From the IMG/VR virus record IMGVR_UViG_3300008117_000011, positions 1-64,000 of that record: a stretch of DNA of 64,000 nt; one strand, given 5' to 3'. A program made the position numbers and the translations under genes. The notes under the pieces are model-generated. The model ran no database searches. It saw only the letters and a program-made list of their open reading frames with translations, and was not told the DNA's origin. This document shows, in pieces, positions 6,411 through 58,652 of the stretch; within the stretch, counting starts at the first letter, position 1; every line of letters begins with the position of its first letter.

Positions 6411-7006
6411 TATCTATGATTTAATATTTTGTTTATCACATCTGGTATTTGCTCATCACTTAATCTGTGAACTTCTTTGTTTTTTTCAAACCAGTTCTTA
6501 ATTACAAAATCAAGAGGTTTTTGTGTTATTTTAGCAAGTCTTTTAAAACCGAATAATTGGGCATCAAGTTCTTTTGGTTGTGTGTAATACTCATAAGGGT
6601 CTTCCGGTTCATCCCCACCAAGTTCATAAGTTCCCTTTATGTTTTGATCTACGTGTCTTATTTCGTGAGCTATTAACTCATTTAGTTCACCAATTAAATC
6701 ATACATAATCTGCATTTTTACCTCTGGGTTATATTCAATACGGATAATAATTATATCATCCTCGTGTAAATATTCCCCATTGATTATAAATGATTGGATC
6801 TCATCATTTTTTACAAGTTGCATTTCAACCGATAGTGGTGTTGGGAGTTCTTTAAATTCATAAAAATCTTTTTCTTCATCAAAGTAATTTGGAAGGTAGA
6901 ATTCACCATCTTCTTCTATTTTAAAGACTTTTGTAATACCAGACACTATTTGTCTTATTACATTTCTTCTTCTGTTGTCTTCAAGTAAAATTTGTTCTTT
7001 GGTCAT
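6410..7006 (-). CDS. Zincin-like metallopeptidase-motif protein
   Basis: IAHEIRHVDQ (HExxH) plus downstream ELDA; start re-called at MTKEQ behind TATTTAT. Confidence 0.6.
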   Translation of the reverse strand: MTKEQILLEDNRRRNVIRQIVSGITKVFKIEEDGEFYLPNYFDEEKDFYEFKELPTPLSVEMQLVKNDEIQSFIINGEYLHEDDIIIIRIEYNPEVKMQIMYDLIGELNELIAHEIRHVDQNIKGTYELGGDEPEDPYEYYTQPKELDAQLFGFKRLAKITQKPLDFVIKNWFEKNKEVHRLSDEQIPDVINKILNHR

Positions 7007-29258: not shown

Positions 29259-29729
29259 CTAATCTATTTCTTCATCCTCACCATTCACTATTTGTTCGGA
29301 ATCTAATACCACCGTTACACTTCTACCAGCAAATGCAGGTTCCCAGGATGCCATTGTTCTAAATGGAAAAAACTTATTCATTTCATCACGTAATGTACTT
29401 ACAAGCCAAGATTCCATATTACTGGTCGGATTATTTGTGTTAAAATGTATTTTAATTCTTACTTTATCTGGTCTATCTTTATTAATTTCTAAATGTAATA
29501 TATCAACATCTTCTATATCTGCATGATAAATAAAACTTTTAACCAACATCTCCTGGGTTTTTAAATCATTTAAATCAAGGTTTAATACCTTTGATAAATT
29601 ATCTATCCCACCAACCGCTTTTGATGTTCTAACAACTCCTAGTGTTTTAATCATATTAGTTAACCTATCTTGACCTTTTTGTGATGTCTCTTCCCTTAAT
29701 ATTCTTCTTATGGATTCATGTATATTCAT
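29259..29729 (-). CDS. MNLQE-leader protein
   Basis: MNIHESIRRILREETS; KAVGGIDNL module. Confidence 0.8.
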   Translation of the reverse strand: MNIHESIRRILREETSQKGQDRLTNMIKTLGVVRTSKAVGGIDNLSKVLNLDLNDLKTQEMLVKSFIYHADIEDVDILHLEINKDRPDKVRIKIHFNTNNPTSNMESWLVSTLRDEMNKFFPFRTMASWEPAFAGRSVTVVLDSEQIVNGEDEEID

Positions 29730-29730
29730 A

Positions 29731-30414
29731 TTACATTACTTTATTTAAAAATATTTTGATTGCGTCTATTATTTTTTGTTCGTTATGGTCAAAATCTTTT
29801 TTGTAAATATTAAAAGGGTCAATTACTTCAAATGTAATTAAAACATCAAAGATTATTGCTATTTGGTGTCTTTCATTGATCCCTTTTTCTATAGCCCATG
29901 TTTTTCCATTTTTTTCAAAAAAAAGGGTTTTAACAATTCTAGATGTTTTTTCATCTCTAACGGGTATTTTTTTAACTTCAAAACGTCTTTTTAAAAAATT
30001 TAGTATTTTTTTAGTTATATATTCAGTTTCTTCTCTTAATACTTTTCTTATTGATTCTTGTAGGTTCGTATATAGTTCTGATATTAATCTTTCATATCTA
30101 ACCTTGATTCTATCTTTATAATATTCTTCTAAACTTTTTTTAGCGTCAACATACCATTGGATATCTCCCGGTATTGTACTATATAATTCATAATGGATCC
30201 CATCAATTAAAATTGAAATTGTTACTTCTACAAATCTTTTTAAACTCATAGCGTCCCCACCATTTTTAATTAAATTAAAAAACATATTTGATGCCATATC
30301 TAATGACTCCTCAAACTCTCTTTCTAAATCCTCGTGTGGTACTCTACGTCGGATTGCTAACATAAAATTGGTTTCTTCCCTTAATATTCTTCTTATGGAT
30401 TCTTGTAGGTTCAT
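29731..30414 (-). CDS. MNLQE-leader two-module fusion
   Basis: Leader + RRR domain, internal NLQESIRKVLREE, then a domain paralogous to 52956. Confidence 0.8.
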   Translation of the reverse strand: MNLQESIRRILREETNFMLAIRRRVPHEDLEREFEESLDMASNMFFNLIKNGGDAMSLKRFVEVTISILIDGIHYELYSTIPGDIQWYVDAKKSLEEYYKDRIKVRYERLISELYTNLQESIRKVLREETEYITKKILNFLKRRFEVKKIPVRDEKTSRIVKTLFFEKNGKTWAIEKGINERHQIAIIFDVLITFEVIDPFNIYKKDFDHNEQKIIDAIKIFLNKVM

Positions 30415-30418
30415 CTAT

Positions 30419-31522
30419 TTATGATTTAATTATTCTCATAATATTTTTAATCCTTTTAATATGTTCATTTAATCTTTGATTATTACCTAATTTTTGAAAA
30501 AACCAATTATACAATTTATTTTTTTTCATATTTTCAAGTGATTCATAATCTTCAAACTGAACATATCTGTCATGAACATCTTTTAATTTTTCAAAAGAAC
30601 AATCACATCTTTGACCTTCTTTATATATTTTATTTTCAAAATAATCAAGTTGTTCTTTGTATTCACTATTATTAGGATTATTATCTAATCTATTTTTCCA
30701 ATATTTTATATTATTAATATAAGTCTCATAATCACTATTAGTATTATCCACAACAGCCGTCATACTACGAGGATTTTGACAAATTGGGCAATAGTACCCC
30801 CATGACCAATCAGACATTTTTTCTGGTTTTTCTCCGTCAGGGTTACATTTTTTACAGACCTCAGATTTTTTTACCATTCCTTTTGGGTAATCGGCATCAG
30901 AACTCACCCATGGCATCATTGCGTCTGAACTACATTGATTACAAACATCTCTGTATTTACCTTCTTTTCTATTTTTGTAATATTCATCATTTTCTTTTCT
31001 TTTCTTATCTTGTTCTTTGTATGTTTTATAATGTCTACCACCAAACAAATAATCAAAATAAACTTTATTACCCATATAATTTACAACATCATCATTAGGT
31101 GTCCATATTGGAACATCTTCAACACTTTTAAAAATATTCATCTCTGAACCATCATAATCTGTGTAAGGTAAATATTCTCCCCTTTTTTTAAGCCATTCTT
31201 GATAAAACTTACCAGCGGCATCTTGATTTCCATTAAAAAATTTATCAACCAAAATATCTTGCATAATATACCTATCAAGTGGTCTATTATTTTTATCATC
31301 TTCTATTGCACTAATAGCCTTAAAATTATCTATTGCCCTCTGTCTAACATCATCAGTCCTACCAAAAGTATTGGGTCTTGTTGGACTAATTGGCTTTCCA
31401 TAACCTTTTTCTTTTAATACGGTTTCCAATTTATTTAAAAATTTTGATGGGTCACCTTTTACGTAGTTATCGTAAAAAACATTATCAATAATCTCATTCC
31501 AATTTATTTCTTTATCTTCCAT
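30419..31522 (-). CDS. Cys-rich (multiple CxxC) hypothetical protein with C-terminal leader-like motif
   Basis: CNQC, CKKC, CPIC, CDC; ends LNEHIKRIKNIMRII. Confidence 0.75.
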   Translation of the reverse strand: MEDKEINWNEIIDNVFYDNYVKGDPSKFLNKLETVLKEKGYGKPISPTRPNTFGRTDDVRQRAIDNFKAISAIEDDKNNRPLDRYIMQDILVDKFFNGNQDAAGKFYQEWLKKRGEYLPYTDYDGSEMNIFKSVEDVPIWTPNDDVVNYMGNKVYFDYLFGGRHYKTYKEQDKKRKENDEYYKNRKEGKYRDVCNQCSSDAMMPWVSSDADYPKGMVKKSEVCKKCNPDGEKPEKMSDWSWGYYCPICQNPRSMTAVVDNTNSDYETYINNIKYWKNRLDNNPNNSEYKEQLDYFENKIYKEGQRCDCSFEKLKDVHDRYVQFEDYESLENMKKNKLYNWFFQKLGNNQRLNEHIKRIKNIMRIIKS

Positions 31523-31532
31523 ACTATATAAT

Positions 31533-31571
31533 TTATTTTAATATTCTTCTTATGTTTTCTTGTAGGTTCAT
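31533..31571 (-). pseudogene. Orphan leader mini-ORF MNLQENIRRILK-stop
   Basis: DNA essentially identical to the leader of 34142-34657 but ends in TAA where E is expected. Confidence 0.6.
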
Positions 31572-31951
31572 ATTACTATATTTCTAATTTGTTTACCTCT
31601 CATTCCTTCAGTGGTCTGGCCAGAATAAAATGATTCACCCATAATAAATATTCTTTTTCCTTTATGTTCCTCCAAGAATGATAAAATAAATTCCATTGCC
31701 GTTAACACAGTATCTACCATTTCGTATTGAAGGCCATCTTGGTCAATAAGTTCTTTTCTTATAGAATTAAATTTTGATGTCAACTGGTGTTCTATAATTC
31801 TAAATACCGTATTTGTTCTAGCAATAAACTGTTTACCATCAATTGTAATCAAAGGAGAATCAATTATTTCAAATTCATATGTTGTATCTCTTCTTATAAT
31901 TGTCTCAATTTGATACTCCAATATTTCGTTAAGTTCTTCTTGTAGGTTCAT
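31568..31951 (-). CDS. MNLQE-leader protein
   Basis: MNLQEELNEILE. Confidence 0.75.
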   Translation of the reverse strand: MNLQEELNEILEYQIETIIRRDTTYEFEIIDSPLITIDGKQFIARTNTVFRIIEHQLTSKFNSIRKELIDQDGLQYEMVDTVLTAMEFILSFLEEHKGKRIFIMGESFYSGQTTEGMRGKQIRNIVI

Positions 31952-31995
31952 ATGTTATAAATATATCATACCTAGATTACCTAAGTATAATATAC

Positions 31996-32295
31996 CTATT
32001 TGTTGTATATCTTCCCCCTAATACTTTTACCATATTTATTTTTTATATATTCATATAACCCGGAATGAATTTTTTTCATCTCCTCTGTTTTTGAAAGCCA
32101 GACAATGAATGTATCCATATTAAGACTTTCGGTCATAATGTGATTTGAAATATCTGTTATTAGTCTATGTTCCCACACATCCGGTTTAAGTGTTTTAGAA
32201 AGCATCTTTGACCCATTACAATTTAAATATAAATTAAATACCTCATCAATTAATGGTACTCTTCTGGCAATTATGTGTTTTACGTCTGGACCCAT
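31996..32295 (-). CDS. 'RR' family protein without leader
   Basis: HIIARRV...YIKNKYGKSI. Confidence 0.65.
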   Translation of the reverse strand: MGPDVKHIIARRVPLIDEVFNLYLNCNGSKMLSKTLKPDVWEHRLITDISNHIMTESLNMDTFIVWLSKTEEMKKIHSGLYEYIKNKYGKSIRGKIYNK

Positions 32296-32373
32296 TTTTT
32301 AAAGATAATAAAACTACCCATAATAAAAAAGGGGACCTATATCTGGTCCCCTTTGTAATGTGTGATAAATATA

Positions 32374-32709
32374 TTAATCACCACAATGAAGGTGATAGTA
32401 TTGTTTTACTTTATCTCCGAATATATCTTTGATATAATTTTCCATTGCTTTGTATGCCTGTTCCCACTCCGGTGTTGCATAACTAATATGCTCCTCAAAA
32501 TATGCGTAGTACATATCTTCTATTACACCGGCTGTAAGATGTATTAAAACCTCATCCCCATTTCTATAGCGACAAATCTTCTCAGGACGATATGTTGTTG
32601 ACATATGGTAATATATCAAGTCTTCTAAATTAACAATTCTTCTTCTTATGTAGTGCGGAAGATTTGTTTCTTCTTTTAGAACTCTTCTTATGTTTTCTTG
32701 TTGGTTCAT
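32374..32709 (-). CDS. MNLQE-leader RRR family protein
   Basis: MNQQENIRRVLKEETNLPHYIRRRI. Confidence 0.8.
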   Translation of the reverse strand: MNQQENIRRVLKEETNLPHYIRRRIVNLEDLIYYHMSTTYRPEKICRYRNGDEVLIHLTAGVIEDMYYAYFEEHISYATPEWEQAYKAMENYIKDIFGDKVKQYYHLHCGD

Positions 32710-33572
32710 TATTTATTGTGATATATATTATATAACTCTTTAATTTCGTCCTCAAATACATTGGAAACTTCTGTAACAAATTCTATTTCTTCTTCCGATG
32801 GTAAATCTTCCCACCCAAGTTCATATTTATTCCAAATAATTGCTTCCACAGCCCTTAAAGTTAATTCATATTTAAATTGTTCATAACTTTCCGTTTCGTA
32901 ATATACTTGATCGGCATTTATTGGGAGCAGGTATTTAACCTCATCTAAATCAATTCTCCTATGAAAGAATTTTGATTCATTTAATATTCTTCTTATGGAT
33001 TCTTTTAATCCTAATAAATCATCCATACTAATTGTTGCACTATCATTACCTAGTTTATTAAGCATATCCGCAAATACATTAGGTTCTTCAGGTGTTTTTG
33101 GTTCTTCATATTTAGTTTTGTTACTTGGGTATTTTCCTGTTTTTTGATAAACCTCCATATCATCATCTTTTTGTTCGTCAGAACTAATTAATTTAAGAGC
33201 CGAAGGTGGTATTGGGTCTAAAGTTACATAGTATTTAAAATCATTCCCATCATCTTTATGTATTGGGTCATGAAACCATTGGTTATTTATTTTAGATAAA
33301 TCTATTTCCCATTCATCCCCACCAAAAAAACTATATTCAGGGTCTGAAGCAAAGACCATTGGTAATGGGTCTGAATCAGGAAAATTATGAGACATATAAT
33401 TTGAGGTGTATTTACCAACTTTGGGTAATAACCCGTGTTTTTGGATACTTTCTCTATTTTTATACGTTGTTCTATGTCGTAACACCCCTTTTGGATGTGC
33501 GGGAACTAAAACATCTCTTAATTGTTTAACCTCTTCCCTTAATATTCTTCTTATGGATTCTTTTAAGTTCAT
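32709..33572 (-). CDS. Leader-tagged ADP-ribosyltransferase-like (Tpt1/KptA-type fold) domain fused to RRR domain
   Basis: LRHRTT..NRESIQKHGLLPK...VFAS...WEIDL...IPPSAL; internal LKESIRRILNE; start re-called. Confidence 0.55.
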   Translation of the reverse strand: MNLKESIRRILREEVKQLRDVLVPAHPKGVLRHRTTYKNRESIQKHGLLPKVGKYTSNYMSHNFPDSDPLPMVFASDPEYSFFGGDEWEIDLSKINNQWFHDPIHKDDGNDFKYYVTLDPIPPSALKLISSDEQKDDDMEVYQKTGKYPSNKTKYEEPKTPEEPNVFADMLNKLGNDSATISMDDLLGLKESIRRILNESKFFHRRIDLDEVKYLLPINADQVYYETESYEQFKYELTLRAVEAIIWNKYELGWEDLPSEEEIEFVTEVSNVFEDEIKELYNIYHNK

Positions 33573-33612
33573 ATGTAATAAATATATTATTATTCTTATA
33601 TTTGTGGATATT

Positions 33613-34155
33613 ATGGATTGTATCGTCACCGAAAATAAAAAATCAAACACCATTAAACTTATTCATAGTAAAATAAGTGAGTGGGGAGTAATTGGTGCTA
33701 GTCAAAGACTTGGTCTTTCTATTGATAAGTTTGTTGAACTTGGTGTTTTTAACTATCGTTTTGACACATTTCTTAATTACACAGATCTTCTTTATTTATC
33801 ACTATATGTTGTTGAAAAGAGTGGTCTGGTAAGTAAAGTTGATGAGACTTATGATTTTATGTGGTGGGGTGGGAATTCTAGGATGTATTTTGATTGTGCT
33901 GACTTAATTAATAATAATACTATGGTCGGATATGGAACACCATATTATGATGATATTCCTTATCTGGAGATTGAATCTGAAGTTTTTAATAAGTATTCTA
34001 TTGATTTTCGTAGAACTTATAAGTTAAAGTCCATTTCAGAATTTAAATCATTTAATGAATTTGAATCTTATATCTTAAATGATGTGTCAAAACTTGTATC
34101 AGACACAATCTTTGATGTTATTGAAAGAGTTGAAAGGGAAATTAAGGAAGGGTAA
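33613..34155 (+). CDS. 'GYATP' family protein with degenerate leader
   Basis: MDCIVTENKK; VGYGTPYY; TATATTTG upstream. Confidence 0.7.
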   Translation: MDCIVTENKKSNTIKLIHSKISEWGVIGASQRLGLSIDKFVELGVFNYRFDTFLNYTDLLYLSLYVVEKSGLVSKVDETYDFMWWGGNSRMYFDCADLINNNTMVGYGTPYYDDIPYLEIESEVFNKYSIDFRRTYKLKSISEFKSFNEFESYILNDVSKLVSDTIFDVIERVEREIKEG

Positions 34156-34657
34156 CTGATGGTTCAAAACTTATAATATAATCATCTTCGTCTAATTTAA
34201 GTTGTCTTGCCAAATCATATGTAAAATCCTCAAATAGATATTTTAACTCCCATTTCATTGCTTTAAGATTAAAACCATCTTCACCATCTTTCAGATCTGC
34301 CAAATCATATGTTTTTTCCTCCCCATTCCTTAATGTAACTGTTACTGTTCCTTCTAATATCTTATAATAAAAGGTCATAGTCCCATACATATCAAGTTCT
34401 ACGTGTCTTATCTGGAATTTAAAATCGTATCCTTCTGTGTAGTCAGATTTAAAGTCATTTGATGAAAATATTTGATTCTGGAGATGTCGTCCAAGAAGTA
34501 TTGTTGGTCTTTCATTTAAAATCTTTCCCAGATTATTAATTCCATTTACTTTTTTTGCAACCGGAATGATACCATCCTTCTTAATCATCTTAAGTAGCCT
34601 GGACTGGATGGATGTTTCTTCTTTTAATATTCTTCTTATGTTTTCTTGTAGGTTCAT
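34142..34657 (-). CDS. MNLQE-leader protein (GYDF...EGTV family)
   Basis: Paralogous to the C-terminal half of 39709. Confidence 0.8.
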   Translation of the reverse strand: MNLQENIRRILKEETSIQSRLLKMIKKDGIIPVAKKVNGINNLGKILNERPTILLGRHLQNQIFSSNDFKSDYTEGYDFKFQIRHVELDMYGTMTFYYKILEGTVTVTLRNGEEKTYDLADLKDGEDGFNLKAMKWELKYLFEDFTYDLARQLKLDEDDYIISFEPSVTLP

Positions 34658-56297: not shown

Positions 56298-56891
56298 ATG
56301 AAAAAGTTTATATTATTTTTATTTTTAGTTTTTCCTTTTGTTTCTTTATCACAAAAAAAATTAAGAGATAGTGTCATTGTAAATGCTGACATATTCAAAA
56401 TCATTTATTCAGAAAAACTACAACAACCTCTTTCTGTAAAATATAATGTTCAATGTCCTTCTGGATCTGCGTCAAGAAAAGGTCTTGATTTTTTTACTTG
56501 TGATTCAATATTAACTTCAGATGGTAAGGATTATGATAACAATGTTTGGGATAAAGGTCATATGGCACCTGCCGCGGATTTTAATTGTACAAGAGATCTA
56601 ATGAAAAAAACTTTCACTTATTTAAATTGTACTTTACAACATCAAGATCTTAATAGAACCACTTGGAGGCTTTTAGAAACATATGAAAGATCGTTAGCTT
56701 TAAAATATAAAGTAGTTTCGGTTGAGGTTATTTGTGAATTTACTAAATCCTCTAAAGTGTTACCTTCAGGTGCAACTATACCCGATGGTTATTATAAAAT
56801 AATTAAATATAATAACACAACCGAAACCTATTATTTCAAAAACGAAAAACCTTCTTCAACTGATTATAAAAAATATCAAGTTAAAGGTTGA
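56298..56891 (+). CDS. Secreted DNA/RNA non-specific endonuclease (NucA/EndoG family)
   Basis: Signal peptide; WDKGHMAPAAD...TFTYLN..LQ...LN..TW..LE. Confidence 0.85.
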   Translation: MKKFILFLFLVFPFVSLSQKKLRDSVIVNADIFKIIYSEKLQQPLSVKYNVQCPSGSASRKGLDFFTCDSILTSDGKDYDNNVWDKGHMAPAADFNCTRDLMKKTFTYLNCTLQHQDLNRTTWRLLETYERSLALKYKVVSVEVICEFTKSSKVLPSGATIPDGYYKIIKYNNTTETYYFKNEKPSSTDYKKYQVKG

Positions 56892-57270
56892 TCTCAAACC
56901 GGGATTTCATCGTTTGAATCTTATCTTCCGGAACTCCGTGCTTATTCACACCTCCGTGTCTATTTTCAACAATTACTGAAAATACGGTGTATCCATATTC
57001 TTTGGCCATATTTACATAAGGCTCCATCTCCCACTCTTGTGTGAAAGTGTTTGACACAACAATTTTTGGGTATTCCAAAATCATATCCCCTTTAACCATT
57101 CCCTGACACCACTGGTGAGCATCTTTAATCTTTGTTGGGTCAAAATTGTAATTACCGGATTCACCAATAAAATACATATCAGCCTCATAGTGATTGCCAC
57201 CCAGTGTTTTTGCAAATGTTGATTTTCCGGATCCCGGAATTCCTCTTACGATATAAAGTACTTTTTCCAT
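56881..57270 (-). CDS. P-loop (AAA_33 / N4BP2-like) kinase
   Basis: VRGIPGSGKST, EADMYF, VSNTF, HGVP; start re-called at MEKVL. Confidence 0.85.
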   Translation of the reverse strand: MEKVLYIVRGIPGSGKSTFAKTLGGNHYEADMYFIGESGNYNFDPTKIKDAHQWCQGMVKGDMILEYPKIVVSNTFTQEWEMEPYVNMAKEYGYTVFSVIVENRHGGVNKHGVPEDKIQTMKSRFEINL

Positions 57271-57271
57271 C

Positions 57272-57481
57272 TTATTCTGATTTAAAGGTTTCGTTGTAGT
57301 ATTGTTCAACATTCCTATCCGCTTCCATTATAGCATCAACCCCTCCTTGCACATAGAAATTATATAAATGCTCCTTCTCCATTTCTTTGGCTTTTTCAAA
57401 TGCCTTTCCCATTTCTAATAAGTTGCCAGAATGTTTTATGTATTGCTCTTTTAACCATTCTACTGCTGTCTGTTTTTTCAT
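57272..57481 (-). CDS. 'KQTAVEWL...YYNETFKSE' small phage protein
   Basis: Common small-protein pattern in Bacteroidota phages. Confidence 0.7.
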   Translation of the reverse strand: MKKQTAVEWLKEQYIKHSGNLLEMGKAFEKAKEMEKEHLYNFYVQGGVDAIMEADRNVEQYYNETFKSE

Positions 57482-57493
57482 ATCATACACGTT

Positions 57494-57706
57494 TTAAAGG
57501 GTATCTCCTATTTGCCATTTACCACAATCAGCATAAAATCTAGTATAGTCCCATTTACCTATAAATACATATTCACACCTACCATTTCTATATTGTGTAA
57601 TCTCAGCACATATAGAAATTCCTTCTTTTATCTCCTTTCCATTATAATGATTGTCACAACTTACTAATATCATCATAATAAAAACTCCAATTAAGTATTT
57701 TCTCAT
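57494..57706 (-). CDS. Small lipoprotein
   Basis: MRKYLIGVFIMMILVSC lipobox. Confidence 0.65.
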   Translation of the reverse strand: MRKYLIGVFIMMILVSCDNHYNGKEIKEGISICAEITQYRNGRCEYVFIGKWDYTRFYADCGKWQIGDTL

Positions 57707-57825
57707 ATCACACACGTTTTATAAATTAGACATAAAAAAGCTGTAATTATACAACTCCCACATATAAACAAAAATCTTTTGTTGGGGGATAAATCTTCCC
57801 ATAACCATTTGTTAAATCTTTCCAT
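57703..57825 (-). CDS. 40 aa TM micro-protein
   Basis: MERFNKWLWEDLSPNKRFLFICGSCIITAFLCLIYKTCVI. Confidence 0.5.
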   Translation of the reverse strand: MERFNKWLWEDLSPNKRFLFICGSCIITAFLCLIYKTCVI

Positions 57826-57843
57826 ATCACACACGTTTTAAAA

Positions 57844-57906
57844 TTAAGGTCTATCACCCCAAGTAAACACTTGTTCTTCTAACCATTCTACTGCTGTCTT
57901 TTTCAT
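57844..57906 (-). pseudogene. Truncated KQTAVEWL paralogue, 20 aa
   Basis: MKKTAVEWLEEQVFTWGDRP*. Confidence 0.5.
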
Positions 57907-57921
57907 CTTATTCTGATTTAA

Positions 57922-57999
57922 TTATCTTTTCATTATGTTGTAACACATTGCGATTCCAGTAATCATTCCCATTAAAAAAAATATAATCTCTAGGTGCAT
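57922..57999 (-). CDS. 25 aa hydrophobic micro-protein
   Basis: MHLEIIFFLMGMITGIAMCYNIMKR. Confidence 0.45.
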   Translation of the reverse strand: MHLEIIFFLMGMITGIAMCYNIMKR

Positions 58000-58074
58000 C
58001 TTATTCTGATTTAAAGGTTAATAAATTTAATTACTACTAATGGTTGTTCTTCATTTTCTGATTTTATTCTCATC

Positions 58075-58221
58075 TTATTCTGATTTAAAGGTTAAAGGGT
58101 TTTCTGTCCAAATTGTGCCATCATCTTCTCTCATTGCTTCAATCATTGTCCAAGCAAACCAATAGGGTAAACTTACTGGAAGAAATATAATTGATAATAT
58201 TACTATTTGATATCTTTTCAT
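58075..58221 (-). CDS. 48 aa TM micro-protein ending TFKSE
   Basis: MKRYQIVILSIIFLPVSLPYWFAW...LTFKSE; TATATTTG 4 nt before ATG. Confidence 0.55.
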   Translation of the reverse strand: MKRYQIVILSIIFLPVSLPYWFAWTMIEAMREDDGTIWTENPLTFKSE

Positions 58222-58238
58222 ATCACAAATATAATAAA

Positions 58239-58652
58239 TTATTCTGATGTTTCTAATCTTTCAAGCATTTCTTTTATTCTCTTTACAGATTTTTCTTTTA
58301 ACGGTAATGGATTTCCATCTTCATCAATATATACAAATTTGGTATGTGTCTTTAGAACAACAGCTTGTCTACCGGTCCTTACATTGTGAGCTCTTGCTTC
58401 AATATATAATGTAACTGATGTATTTCCAATAGACGCCGGATATCCAAATATTTTAAGTAGTTGTCCTTCTTTACTTGGTTTTTCAAATACACATTTGTCA
58501 ATTGACACTGTGACCATTCTTGGTGTGTCACATAGTTGCATCGCATAAGCAACAGCGGCTGCGTCAAGCCATGCCAATAATTTTCCACCAAAAAGATTTC
58601 CGTGAAATCCAAGATCTGATTTTTTAATTGGGTGTGTTGTTATTAATTCCAT
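58239..58652 (-). CDS. Acyl-CoA thioesterase (hotdog fold, YciA-like)
   Basis: DLGFHGNLFGGKLLAWLD...MVTVSID...IGNTSVT...FVYIDEDG.P. Confidence 0.85.
   Translation of the reverse strand: MELITTHPIKKSDLGFHGNLFGGKLLAWLDAAAVAYAMQLCDTPRMVTVSIDKCVFEKPSKEGQLLKIFGYPASIGNTSVTLYIEARAHNVRTGRQAVVLKTHTKFVYIDEDGNPLPLKEKSVKRIKEMLERLETSE

What the first reader, a model, noticed from the sequence alone, without database searches (positions are those of the whole stretch)
57268..58233. Second micro-gene array built from repeated stop/start junctions
Seen: seven ORFs of 20-70 aa behind one TATATTTG promoter are joined by two repeats. AACCTTTAAATCAGAATAAGATG (four copies) encodes TFKSE-stop plus the next ATG, and TAAAACGTGT(G/A)TGATATG (three copies) supplies the other starts. 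Two unrelated ORFs end in TFKSE, one KQTAVEWL copy is truncated, and the downstream kinase also starts from a junction. Unlike the attC sites these repeats are not palindromic. Inference: short-homology shuffling of early membrane micro-proteins with built-in translational coupling.
Basis: partly seen in the sequence, partly recalled or inferred. Interest (0 to 1): 0.6.

Follow-up and report, generated by a model that had tools for sequence, protein, structure and literature searches.

The report
Conserved stop-start linker of phage micro-genes
A 23-base sequence that ends one tiny gene and starts the next is repeated in this lake phage and, almost letter for letter, in hundreds of other uncultured phages, where it is the fixed tail of a very large family of small proteins and marks the borders of exchangeable gene cassettes.

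Summary
On the minus strand of 57268-58233, seven ORFs of 20-70 aa follow a TATATTTG-N4-ATG start. They are joined by type A (AACCTTTAAATCAGAATAAGATG: three full copies plus one 18-nt copy) and type B (three copies). The window is part of a 224-kb freshwater phage. Type A is not local: the 18-nt core occurs in at least 119 other viral contigs, often in arrays. It is the 3' block of a huge undescribed small-protein family (MKQTAVEWL...EQAKEMEKEQI...EQYYNETFKSE; at least 7,878 clusters). The block is fixed at the nucleotide level with rare codons (ACC 28/33 versus 8% expected). It carries TAA in two frames, or all three when preceded by TTAACC. The ATG follows one base later, in an unstructured A-rich context with A at -3, -6, -12 and -13, as suits ribosomes that ignore Shine-Dalgarno sequences. 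Unrelated ORFs, and even a tRNA-like RNA, sit between copies, and ORF tails change with the local junction allele. Copies within a genome evolve in concert. Cassette exchange at the repeat is shown by examples and a weak trend (45% versus 25% breakpoints, p=0.07). None of 17 recent indels used it. Type B is lineage-specific. Best reading: a portable stop-restart adaptor that also serves as a homology patch.

The parts
58226..58233 (-). TATATTTG, a Bacteroidota-type -7 promoter box lying 4 nt before the ATG of ORF 1. It predicts a leaderless or near-leaderless mRNA.
   Evidence: Sequence. TAnnTTTG-N4-ATG occurs 113 times in relatives, versus 2-34 at other spacings and 7 in the reversed-motif control. 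The -7 box lies 4-5 nt from the transcription start in F. johnsoniae (PMC6847099).
58075..58221 (-). ORF 1, 48 aa: one transmembrane segment plus a conserved REDDGTIWTENPL motif. The TFKSE tail is supplied by the junction.
   Evidence: Six homologue clusters at 66-92% identity, whose tails change with the local junction allele.
58071..58093 (-). Type A junction, copy 1 (full 23-mer, preceded by TTTAACC, so stops in all three frames).
58011..58073 (-). ORF 2, 20 aa, no homologues. It contains a degenerate second junction-like stretch and is probably junction debris rather than a gene.
   Evidence: family D1.
57997..58019 (-). Type A junction, copy 2 (full 23-mer, TTAACC form). ORF 2 stops at the TAA inside TTTAAA.
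57922..57999 (-). ORF 3, 25 aa, a single transmembrane segment. It stops just before the junction.
   Evidence: The homologue in L063 also sits between two junction copies, with a different downstream gene.
57904..57921 (-). Type A junction, copy 3 (18-nt core only).
57844..57906 (-). ORF 4, 20 aa: a truncated 5' fragment of a TAVEWL-family gene.
   Evidence: direct repeat D4.
57823..57840 (-). Type B junction, copy 1.
57703..57825 (-). ORF 5, 40 aa, C-terminal transmembrane segment. Its last residues (KTCVI) and its TGA stop are encoded by type B copy 2, overlapping the next start as ATGA.
57704..57721 (-). Type B junction, copy 2.
57494..57706 (-). ORF 6, 70 aa, a lipoprotein-like signal peptide with lipobox LVSC.
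   Evidence: One homologue at 81% identity on another contig.
57479..57496 (-). Type B junction, copy 3 (A variant).
57272..57481 (-). ORF 7, 69 aa: a full-length member of the MKQTAVEWL / EQAKEMEKEQI / EQYYNETFKSE family, predicted as three helices.
57268..57290 (-). Type A junction, copy 4 (full 23-mer, GAAACC form). A 37-nt stretch is identical to the copy at 71105 of the same record.
56881..57270 (-). P-loop kinase-like ATPase (AAA_33, phrog_2071), the last gene of the unit. It starts at the junction's ATG.
   Evidence: In relatives the same gene has its own TAnnTTTG-N4-ATG.
58239..58652 (-). 4HBT thioesterase, the conserved upstream anchor of the hypervariable interval.

Best explanation
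Type A is a local set of copies of a 23-nt stop-restart linker shared by a large group of uncultured freshwater phages, probably phages of Flavobacteria. It originated as the 3' terminal block of a very large small-protein family (N-terminus MKQTAVEWL, middle EQAKEMEKEQI, C-terminus EQYYNETFKSE) and has been carried onto unrelated cargo. How it works. (a) Whatever ORF runs into it is terminated, because it holds TAA in two frames, or in all three when preceded by TTAACC. (b) One base after the last TAA comes an ATG in an unstructured, A-rich context with A at -3, -6, -12 and -13. Ribosomes of a host that does not use Shine-Dalgarno pairing can restart there, or initiate afresh. (c) The first gene of the array is instead served by a TAnnTTTG-N4-ATG promoter that probably gives a leaderless mRNA, so the linker solves initiation for the internal genes. 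(d) Because the same 23-40 nt flank many cassettes in many co-occurring phages, the linker is also a homology patch. Cassettes are exchanged there and copies within a genome are homogenised, possibly by the phage's own UvsX-like recombinase. Type B is a lineage-specific second linker with the same logic: stops in three frames plus an ATG(A). Shown: the anatomy, distribution, frame usage, nucleotide-level constraint, concerted evolution and mosaic examples. Inferred: translational restart, leaderless first gene, and recombination at the linker.
For: Distribution: the 18-nt core occurs in at least 119 viral contigs, often 2-3 copies 100-600 nt apart. It is essentially absent from 185,579 prokaryote genomes: 5 small MAG contigs, 2 of them Flavobacterium/Flavobacteriales. 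Discrete element: information content is high from -20 to +2 and collapses on both sides. Frame independence: of 139 junctions, 87 upstream ORFs end in the FKSE frame, 21 stop at the TAA in TTTAAA, 13 have their own stop upstream and 18 have no upstream ORF. TAA lies in three frames in the TTAACC form. The third frame is open into the next gene, as natural fusions with an LNQNK linker show. Nucleotide constraint in a motif-blind sample: ACC 28/33 versus 8% body usage (p 8e-26) and TCA 33/33 versus 31% (p 1e-17). Coupling geometry: spacer of 1 nt in 40/71 and ATGA overlap in 14/71. Initiation context: A at -3, -6, -12, -13 matches the positive determinants measured in F. johnsoniae (PMC6847099). 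MFE is -0.3 to -1.9 kcal/mol. Phage gene starts show the Bacteroidota A peak at -11 to -13. Leaderless first genes: a TAnnTTTG-N4-ATG spike of 113. Cargo independence: a non-coding tRNA-like element is bracketed by two copies. The ORF 1 tail follows the local allele. L063, L105 and G000 show cassette swaps with similarity ending at the junction. The thioesterase-kinase interval is hypervariable. Concerted evolution: 0.31 versus 0.14, p<0.0005. A UvsX-like recombinase is encoded. Summed contig depth rises from about 5-10 to 675-2352 over the junction region in lake metagenomes.
Against: As a generic start context the junction scores only at the 22nd percentile (this genome) and the 66th (junction-bearing loci) of real gene starts. 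Initiation-region optimisation therefore does not explain its specific letters. The family's internal block, far from any start or stop, is equally fixed at synonymous sites (CAG 21/21 versus 27%). A cause other than translation must therefore act on at least part of the conservation. No clean recent indel (0 of 17) is bounded by the junction; other 12-32-nt repeats are used. The excess of homology breakpoints is not significant (p=0.07 and 0.20). Mosaics inferred from metagenome contigs could in part be assembly chimeras at a shared repeat. There is no expression or ribosome data for the micro-ORFs. The host is inferred only from promoter and start-context signatures and two MAG bins.
Confidence: 0.55

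Rival explanations
1. No function of its own. The junction is just the 3' end of a rapidly duplicating, recombining small-gene family plus the next start codon. Copies behind unrelated ORFs are debris of recombination between family members, and nucleotide identity reflects recent common descent and gene conversion, not selection on the linker.
For: All three blocks of the family, including the internal one, are fixed at synonymous sites. ORF 4 is a truncated family copy and ORF 2 looks like junction debris. One indel is bounded by the family's 5' block. Copies evolve in concert within genomes. The junction is an ordinary, not outstanding, start context.
Against: The 23-nt core keeps its sharp boundaries and its ATG in non-family contexts: after unrelated ORFs in other frames, after a tRNA-like RNA, and before the kinase. 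Stop-to-ATG spacing is held at 1 nt or an overlap while the spacer base varies freely. The TTAACC variant adds a third-frame stop. These features look selected.
Confidence: 0.2
2. The junction is the binding or cleavage site of a trans-acting factor. One possibility is a phage translational repressor or endoribonuclease that shuts off the whole set of cassette genes together, as T4 RegA and RegB do (from my own knowledge). Another is a DNA operator like the stoperators of mycobacteriophage L5.
For: There is sequence-specific conservation of letters that generic initiation does not need (CC at -18/-17, TCAG at -10 to -7). Orientation follows transcription strictly: all 9 copies or near-copies in the record are on one strand. 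Alleles are shared within a genome, as expected if sites co-evolve with a factor.
Against: No candidate factor was identified. The element occurs in contigs of very different sizes and gene content, so all would need the same factor. The internal family block is conserved in the same way without being at a start.
Confidence: 0.12
3. The junction is a promoter for a phage-specified polymerase or sigma factor that starts transcription at or next to the ATG. Every cassette would then be its own leaderless transcription unit.
For: This clade already places host-type promoters so that the ATG is the likely transcript start. The element has the length of a single-subunit polymerase promoter and a fixed distance to the ATG. 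It also precedes a non-coding tRNA-like gene by 7-8 nt, where a translation signal makes no sense.
Against: It has no resemblance to TAnnTTTG. There are only 8 copies in a 224-kb genome, all at micro-genes. In 63% of cases it is translated as the tail of the upstream ORF. No dedicated polymerase or sigma factor was looked for or found. The tRNA-like cases can be relics of cassette insertion.
Confidence: 0.08
4. Assembly artefact: the array or the mosaics are chimeras made by metagenome assemblers at a short repeat shared by many genomes.
For: Unitig-level contigs of public runs break exactly at junction copies, and many foreign contigs pile up there.
Against: The whole array is 100% identical in a second IMG/VR contig from another data set (L128/L265). 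Runs from about 17 studies hold the stretch. A 658-nt contig with no differences spans 57369-58026, including type B copies and a type A copy. The repeat (23-43 nt) is shorter than the final k-mers of common assemblers (my own knowledge).
Confidence: 0.03

Closest known systems
PeSLs (promoter-early stem-loops) of T4-type phages (PMC2839356, PMC4122927)
   Same: Short conserved motifs repeated between small ORFan genes in hyperplastic regions, co-oriented with transcription. They bring expression signals with each cassette and are proposed to mediate modular shuffling by recombination between copies. An integron-like logic without an integrase.
   Different: PeSLs are about 100 bp, intergenic, and made of a sigma-70 promoter plus a terminator hairpin plus an SD. 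The junction here is 23 nt and has no promoter, hairpin or SD. It is partly coding (it supplies the last five residues and the stop of the upstream ORF) and acts, if at all, at the level of translation. Mini-circles were shown for PeSLs; no recombination product is shown here.
Start-associated sequences (SAS) of Cluster K mycobacteriophages (PMC3203893)
   Same: An asymmetric, highly conserved short repeat placed immediately at the start codons of a subset of genes, in one orientation. It is conserved across related phages in front of genes of different families, its function is unproven, and a role in translation initiation is suspected.
   Different: SAS is 13 bp, contains the SD core AGGAG, has 11-19 copies per genome and is confined to one phage cluster. 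The junction here has no SD, includes the upstream stop codons and the ATG, belongs to the coding 3' end of a protein family, and is spread over hundreds of diverse contigs.
Translational coupling by termination-reinitiation at adjacent or overlapping stop/start codons (general bacterial and archaeal mechanism; my own knowledge)
   Same: Stop and start lie 1 nt apart or overlap (TAAGATG, TAGAATG, TAAATG, ATGA).
   Different: Ordinary coupled gene pairs do not share a conserved 23-nt sequence. Here the same sequence is reused as a portable module, and it also works where no upstream ORF exists.
Integron gene cassettes and attC sites
   Same: Arrays of small promoterless cassettes behind one promoter, bounded by a recurring site. 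The cargo is highly variable.
   Different: attC sites are imperfect inverted repeats that fold as single-stranded hairpins and need an integrase. The junction has no inverted repeat and no integrase is implicated.
Stoperators of mycobacteriophage L5 / Cluster A (named in PMC3203893; details from my own knowledge)
   Same: An asymmetric 13-bp site repeated in short intergenic spaces near stops and starts, in one orientation relative to transcription.
   Different: Stoperators are repressor-binding DNA sites of temperate phages. No repressor or lysogeny module is known here.

Membership tests
PeSL regulatory cassettes | Contains a consensus host promoter | tested here: not met
   The junction has no TAnnTTTG box (sequence). 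Only the head of the array has one.
PeSL regulatory cassettes | Contains a stem-loop terminator | tested here: not met
   No inverted repeats in 57200-58300. MFE of the junction +/-25 nt is -0.3 to -1.9 kcal/mol.
PeSL regulatory cassettes | Flanks ORFans in hyperplastic regions that differ between close relatives | tested here: met
   The thioesterase-kinase interval is 1-4.7 kb with unrelated content in about 20 relatives. Median cargo is 63 codons.
PeSL regulatory cassettes | Recombination between copies demonstrated (deletions, mini-circles) | tested here: inconclusive
   Examples of swaps ending at the junction and a trend of 45% versus 25% (p=0.07). But 0/17 recent indels are bounded by it, and the joints in laid contigs are too short to trust.
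Start-associated sequences (SAS) | Asymmetric conserved repeat abutting the start codon of a subset of genes, in one orientation | tested here: met
   Eight copies plus one weaker near-copy in the record, all on the gene strand, each ending in the ATG.
Start-associated sequences (SAS) | Contains the Shine-Dalgarno core and occupies the RBS position | tested here: not met
   There is no AGGAG-like core in the junction. The inferred host class does not use SD (PMC6847099).
Integron attC cassette array | Cassette boundary is an imperfect palindrome | tested here: not met
   0 inverted repeat pairs.
Integron attC cassette array | Adjacent tyrosine-recombinase integrase | not tested
   No integrase search was run. 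The flanking genes are a thioesterase, DUF2452, a kinase-like ATPase and a nuclease.
Termination-reinitiation coupled gene pairs | Stop and next start within a few nucleotides or overlapping | tested here: met
   Spacer of 1 nt in 40/71 and ATGA overlap in 14/71 in a motif-blind sample. The same holds in the window.
Termination-reinitiation coupled gene pairs | Downstream translation depends on upstream translation | not testable with these tools
   Needs reporters or ribosome profiling. 18 of 139 junctions have no upstream ORF, so coupling cannot be the only mode.
tRNA (for the element bracketed by junctions in L010/L058/L075/L114) | Recognised as a tRNA by ARAGORN or Rfam | tested here: not met
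   ARAGORN found 0 genes and Rfam gave no hit at E<=0.1. Only the acceptor/D and T arm sequences look tRNA-like.

The most novel reading that the evidence does not exclude
The junction, together with the two other nucleotide-fixed blocks of the TAVEWL/YYNETF family, is the recognition or anchor signal of a dedicated cassette system. In this reading a pan-phage pool of thousands of hypervariable micro-genes (and small RNAs) is exchanged and expressed through a common 23-nt stop-restart adaptor in hosts that lack Shine-Dalgarno initiation. It would be functionally an integron-like or PeSL-like system operating at the level of translation, possibly with a trans-acting factor that reads the adaptor.
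Probability: 0.18. Interest if true: 0.85.

Novelty: new variant of a known kind. Interest (0 to 1): 0.64.

Why it matters
Phage genomes hold most of the unexplored small genes on Earth, and how such genes are gained, lost and made expressible is known in detail for only a few model groups (T4 PeSLs, mycobacteriophage SAS). Here a single 23-nt sequence is kept almost letter for letter across hundreds of uncultured lake phages. It ends one micro-gene, starts the next, and forms the tail of a family with at least 7,878 sequence clusters that no database describes. If it is a portable stop-restart adaptor, it shows how operon-internal genes are translated in hosts whose ribosomes ignore Shine-Dalgarno sequences. 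That question is open for Bacteroidota and directly testable in F. johnsoniae. It would also give a simple handle (one short motif) for finding arrays of accessory micro-genes, likely host-takeover, exclusion or anti-defence factors, in metagenomes. The nucleotide-level fixation of three separate blocks inside a hypervariable protein family is itself unexplained.

Tried and rejected
1. Cultured phages: neither the junction DNA (blastn) nor ORF 7 (tblastn) matches any of 50,697 GenBank phage records, so no named host or annotation is available.
2. 'tRNA cassette': I first read the element bracketed by two junctions as a tRNA. ARAGORN and Rfam do not support that, so I call it tRNA-like only.
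3. Structural variants in reads: read laying returned only contigs. Every joint between junction copies has 20-32 nt on its shorter side, which is the repeat itself, so I do not count them as deletions or circles. The single RNA contig lies in the kinase and says nothing about the micro-ORFs.
4. Indels at the junction: 0 of 17. I therefore rejected the strong form of 'gain and loss happens at the repeats'.
5. Junction as a super-consensus start site: rejected. Its PWM percentile is 22 (this genome) and 66 (junction-bearing loci).
6. Function of the family: no Pfam or PHROG hit. The PDB profile search gave nothing credible. The AlphaFold model is a three-helix protein (pLDDT 78) with no Foldseek match at E<=0.001.
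7. T4-like identity and a capsid-targeting-sequence analogy for the MKQTAVEWLxE N-terminus (from memory): there is no gp21-protease or gp23 Pfam match in the record. The controls did not ring and the record is 76% complete, so the idea is neither supported nor excluded.
8. RecT and ERF recombinases: none found. A UvsX-like protein is present.
9. Type B as a widespread element: rejected. Only the near-identical contig plus three single copies carry it.
10. A mosaic test requiring ORFs of at least 40 codons on both sides left too few junction boundaries, so I redid it with matched flanks.
11. Literature: no description of this junction was found.
Full report
WHAT IS THERE. The window is the first 64 kb of a 223,671-bp virus record (31% G+C, CheckV completeness 76%). 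The genes of the finding lie on the minus strand. Downstream of a 4HBT thioesterase (58239-58652) lies a 17-nt spacer holding TATATTTG, then 4 nt, then the ATG of ORF 1. Seven ORFs follow (48, 20, 25, 20, 40, 70 and 69 aa), and then a P-loop kinase-like ATPase (56881-57270; AAA_33, phrog_2071). Its end overlaps a convergent Endonuclease_NS gene.

The ORFs are joined by two direct repeats. Type A is AACCTTTAAATCAGAATAAGATG, with three exact 23-mers and one copy sharing the last 18 nt. Type B is TAAAACGTGT(G/A)TGATATG, with three copies. There are no inverted repeats and no Rfam family. Only three of the four type A copies are full length. Only ORF 1 and ORF 7 read the repeat as TFKSE-stop. ORF 2 reads it in another frame and stops at the TAA inside TTTAAA, and ORF 3 stops just before it.

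THE REPEAT IS NOT LOCAL. The same record has four more type A copies at 70912-71526, outside the window. They join three ~65-aa ORFs and a 162-aa ORF, and one junction shares 37 identical bases with the copy at 57268. Many have two or three copies 100-600 nt apart. Across 130 de-replicated junctions, conservation covers positions -20 to +2 and collapses on either side. In 185,579 prokaryote genomes the 21-nt core occurs only on five small contigs of freshwater MAGs, two of them binned as Flavobacterium/Flavobacteriales. No cultured phage has it. Public runs from about 17 lake or freshwater studies hold the stretch. Summed contig depth rises from about 5-10 on the flanks to 675-2352 over the junction and the adjoining coding end, so many other genomes in those lakes share these termini.

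IT IS THE 3' BLOCK OF A VERY LARGE SMALL-PROTEIN FAMILY. ORF 7 belongs to a family with three conserved blocks (MKQTAVEWL, EQAKEMEKEQI, EQYYNETFKSE) separated by variable linkers. Nearly all are singletons, none has a Pfam domain, and none has a meaningful name. The AlphaFold model is a three-helix protein (pLDDT 78) without a structural relative. The family often stands in tandem, with four copies in L095 for example. In a sample chosen only by the N-terminal peptide, and so blind to codons, 33 of 83 members end TFKSE. Of these, 27 use exactly ACCTTTAAATCAGAA. ACC is used 28/33 times against 8% in the gene bodies (p 8e-26), and TCA 33/33 against 31% (p 1e-17). The preceding YYNE codons (TAC TAC AAC GAA) are likewise fixed with rare codons. 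So are the 5' block (ACA GCA GTA 33-34/34) and the internal block (CAG 21/21 against 27%).

ANATOMY OF THE LINKER. The junction holds TAA in two frames. With the frequent TTAACC prefix it holds TAA in all three, and the ATG is in phase with the first of them. The remaining frame is open into the next gene. Natural tandem fusions of the family use exactly that reading (linker LNQNK). Of 139 distinct junctions in other phages, 87 upstream ORFs end in the FKSE frame, 21 stop at the TTTAAA stop, 13 have their own stop and 18 have no upstream ORF of 20 codons. The ATG lies 1 nt after the stop in 40 of 71 cases and overlaps it as ATGA in 14. The spacer base varies freely (TAAGATG, TAGAATG, TAATATG, TAAAATG). 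The junction has A at -3, -6, -12 and -13, the four positions shown to promote initiation in Flavobacterium johnsoniae, whose ribosomes ignore Shine-Dalgarno sequences (PMC6847099). It is unstructured. Gene starts of these phages show the Bacteroidota-type A peak at -11 to -13. Type B follows the same logic: TAA, TGA and, in two copies, an ATGA overlap give stops in three frames (sequence). It is rare elsewhere.

OPERON HEADS. In relatives of this phage, TAnnTTTG followed by exactly 4 nt and an ATG occurs 113 times, against 2-34 at other spacings and 7 for the reversed motif. In F. johnsoniae the -7 box lies 4-5 nt from the transcript start, so these first genes are probably leaderless. Internal genes cannot use that route, which gives the linker a plausible job.

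CARGO AND MOBILITY. The thioesterase-to-kinase order is kept in about 20 related contigs. The interval between them ranges from 1 to 4.7 kb and holds unrelated genes. None of the seven ORFs recurs there except in a near-identical contig, and the kinase there has its own promoter-type start. ORF 1 is a real conserved micro-protein: six clusters at 66-92% identity in three different neighbourhoods. Its tail follows the local junction allele: TFKSE here, TFKSK in L355 (where both flanking copies carry the same G-to-A change), and SIKPKQK in L357-L360. ORF 3 recurs in L063 between two junction copies. L105 has a different ORF between the same two copies and the same gene after them. Similarity starts and stops at the junction. 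A 77-142-nt tRNA-like element is bracketed by two copies in L010, L058, L075 and L114, while L051 and L068 show the same neighbours without it. Copies within one locus share an allele more often than copies from different loci (0.31 versus 0.14, p<0.0005). The genome encodes a UvsX-like recombinase.

WHAT LIMITS THE SHUFFLING CLAIM. With matched definitions, junction boundaries are homology breakpoints in 10 of 22 clusters against 37 of 146 for ordinary tight gene boundaries (odds ratio 2.5, p=0.07). Anchored on the upstream side the figures are 9/24 against 32/137 (p=0.20). Among 17 clean indels between closely related contigs, none is bounded by the junction. Seven are bounded by other 12-32-nt repeats, one of which is the family's 5' block. 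The laid contigs gave no trustworthy junction-to-junction joints. All mosaics come from assembled metagenomes.

WHAT LIMITS THE TRANSLATION CLAIM. As a generic start context the junction is ordinary (22nd and 66th percentile). The family's internal block is fixed at synonymous sites although it is nowhere near a start. Some of the nucleotide constancy must therefore come from something else, such as gene conversion between the many copies, recent spread, or a sequence-specific reader. No expression data exist for the micro-ORFs.

VERDICT. The best reading (confidence about 0.55) is a portable stop-restart adaptor. It derives from the tail of a hyper-diverse phage micro-protein family and lets any cargo placed between two copies be terminated and re-initiated in a host that does not use Shine-Dalgarno sequences. 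It also serves as a homology patch. The rivals are functionless family debris (0.2), the site of a trans-acting factor (0.12), a phage-specific promoter (0.08) and an assembly artefact (0.03). The closest known systems are T4-type PeSLs and mycobacteriophage SAS. The junction fails their defining features (promoter plus hairpin; SD core), so it is a new variant of the kind, not a member. Of the seven ORFs, 1, 3 and 5 have one transmembrane segment each, 6 has a lipobox, 7 is the soluble family member, 4 is a truncated family copy and 2 is probably debris.

Noticed in passing
L010 (minus strand, about 6660-6810), L058:117-262, L075, L114:1025-1104; also L039, L051, L061, L079, L097, L143, L147: A family of tRNA-like elements with invariant ends (acceptor plus D arm, and T arm plus acceptor) and a hypervariable 30-100-nt middle, 77-151 nt in total. 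Neither ARAGORN nor Rfam calls them. Some are bracketed by two type A junctions. It is unknown what they are (intron-bearing tRNAs, or a scaffolded small RNA).
   Followed up: partly
L128-L264 (relatives); window 58219-58233, 54587; G000 74905, 84202, 85061, 87927: TAnnTTTG followed by exactly 4 nt and an ATG is strongly over-represented (113 versus 2-34 at other spacings). Promoter-proximal genes of this phage clade are therefore probably leaderless, which is unusual for Bacteroidota-type systems, where 87% of host transcripts have leaders longer than 10 nt (PMC6847099).
   Followed up: partly
G000:C1:70426-71526 (outside the window), minus strand: A second array with four type A junctions joining three ~65-aa ORFs and a 162-aa ORF. 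The 162-aa protein has relatives in at least ten junction-bearing contigs. One ORF ends YYNETFKSE but is otherwise unrelated to the family.
   Followed up: partly
window 29698-34640, minus-strand genes: Six neighbouring genes share a nucleotide-identical 5' coding block (N-terminus MNLQESIRRILREE or close variants). This is another case of gene termini held constant at the DNA level in this genome.
   Followed up: no
L022, L033, L074, L101 and others: A second junction allele, ACCTTTAAACAACAAGAACAATGA (peptide TFKQQEQ-stop with an ATGA overlap), recurs in front of family genes. A third, TTAAACCAAAACAAA..ATG, dominates in L357-L360, at least one of which comes from a seawater metagenome.
   Followed up: partly
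P0009, P0010, P0011, P0014, P0041: Double-length proteins that are in-frame fusions of two family members. In P0009 the linker LNQNK is the junction read in its open third frame.
   Followed up: yes
window 57494-57706 (-): ORF 6 has a lipoprotein signal peptide (lipobox LVSC). Small phage lipoproteins such as T5 Llp act in superinfection exclusion (my own knowledge). This was not tested.
   Followed up: no
G000:C1 about 154285-155289 (-) (L354:817-1821): A 334-aa UvsX-like recombinase (phrog_97, E 2e-13). No RecT or ERF was found.
   Followed up: yes
family N-terminus, e.g. window 57449-57481 (-): MKQTAVEWLxE recalls, from memory, the T4 internal-protein capsid-targeting sequence (E-aromatic-I/L-x-E, cut by the prohead protease). 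No T4-type protease or capsid family was found in the record, so this stays an untested lead.
   Followed up: partly
window 57823-57840 and 58219-58233 (-): Type B shares its last 9 nt (TGTGATATG) with the promoter-type start of ORF 1 and its first bases (CCTTTAAA in one copy) with type A. It looks like a hybrid of the two start contexts, and it keeps 4 of the 6 specified bases of the -7 box at the N4 spacing.
   Followed up: no
window 56881-56891: The kinase-like gene (-) and the DNA/RNA non-specific endonuclease gene (+, 56298-56891) converge and overlap by 11 nt.
   Followed up: no
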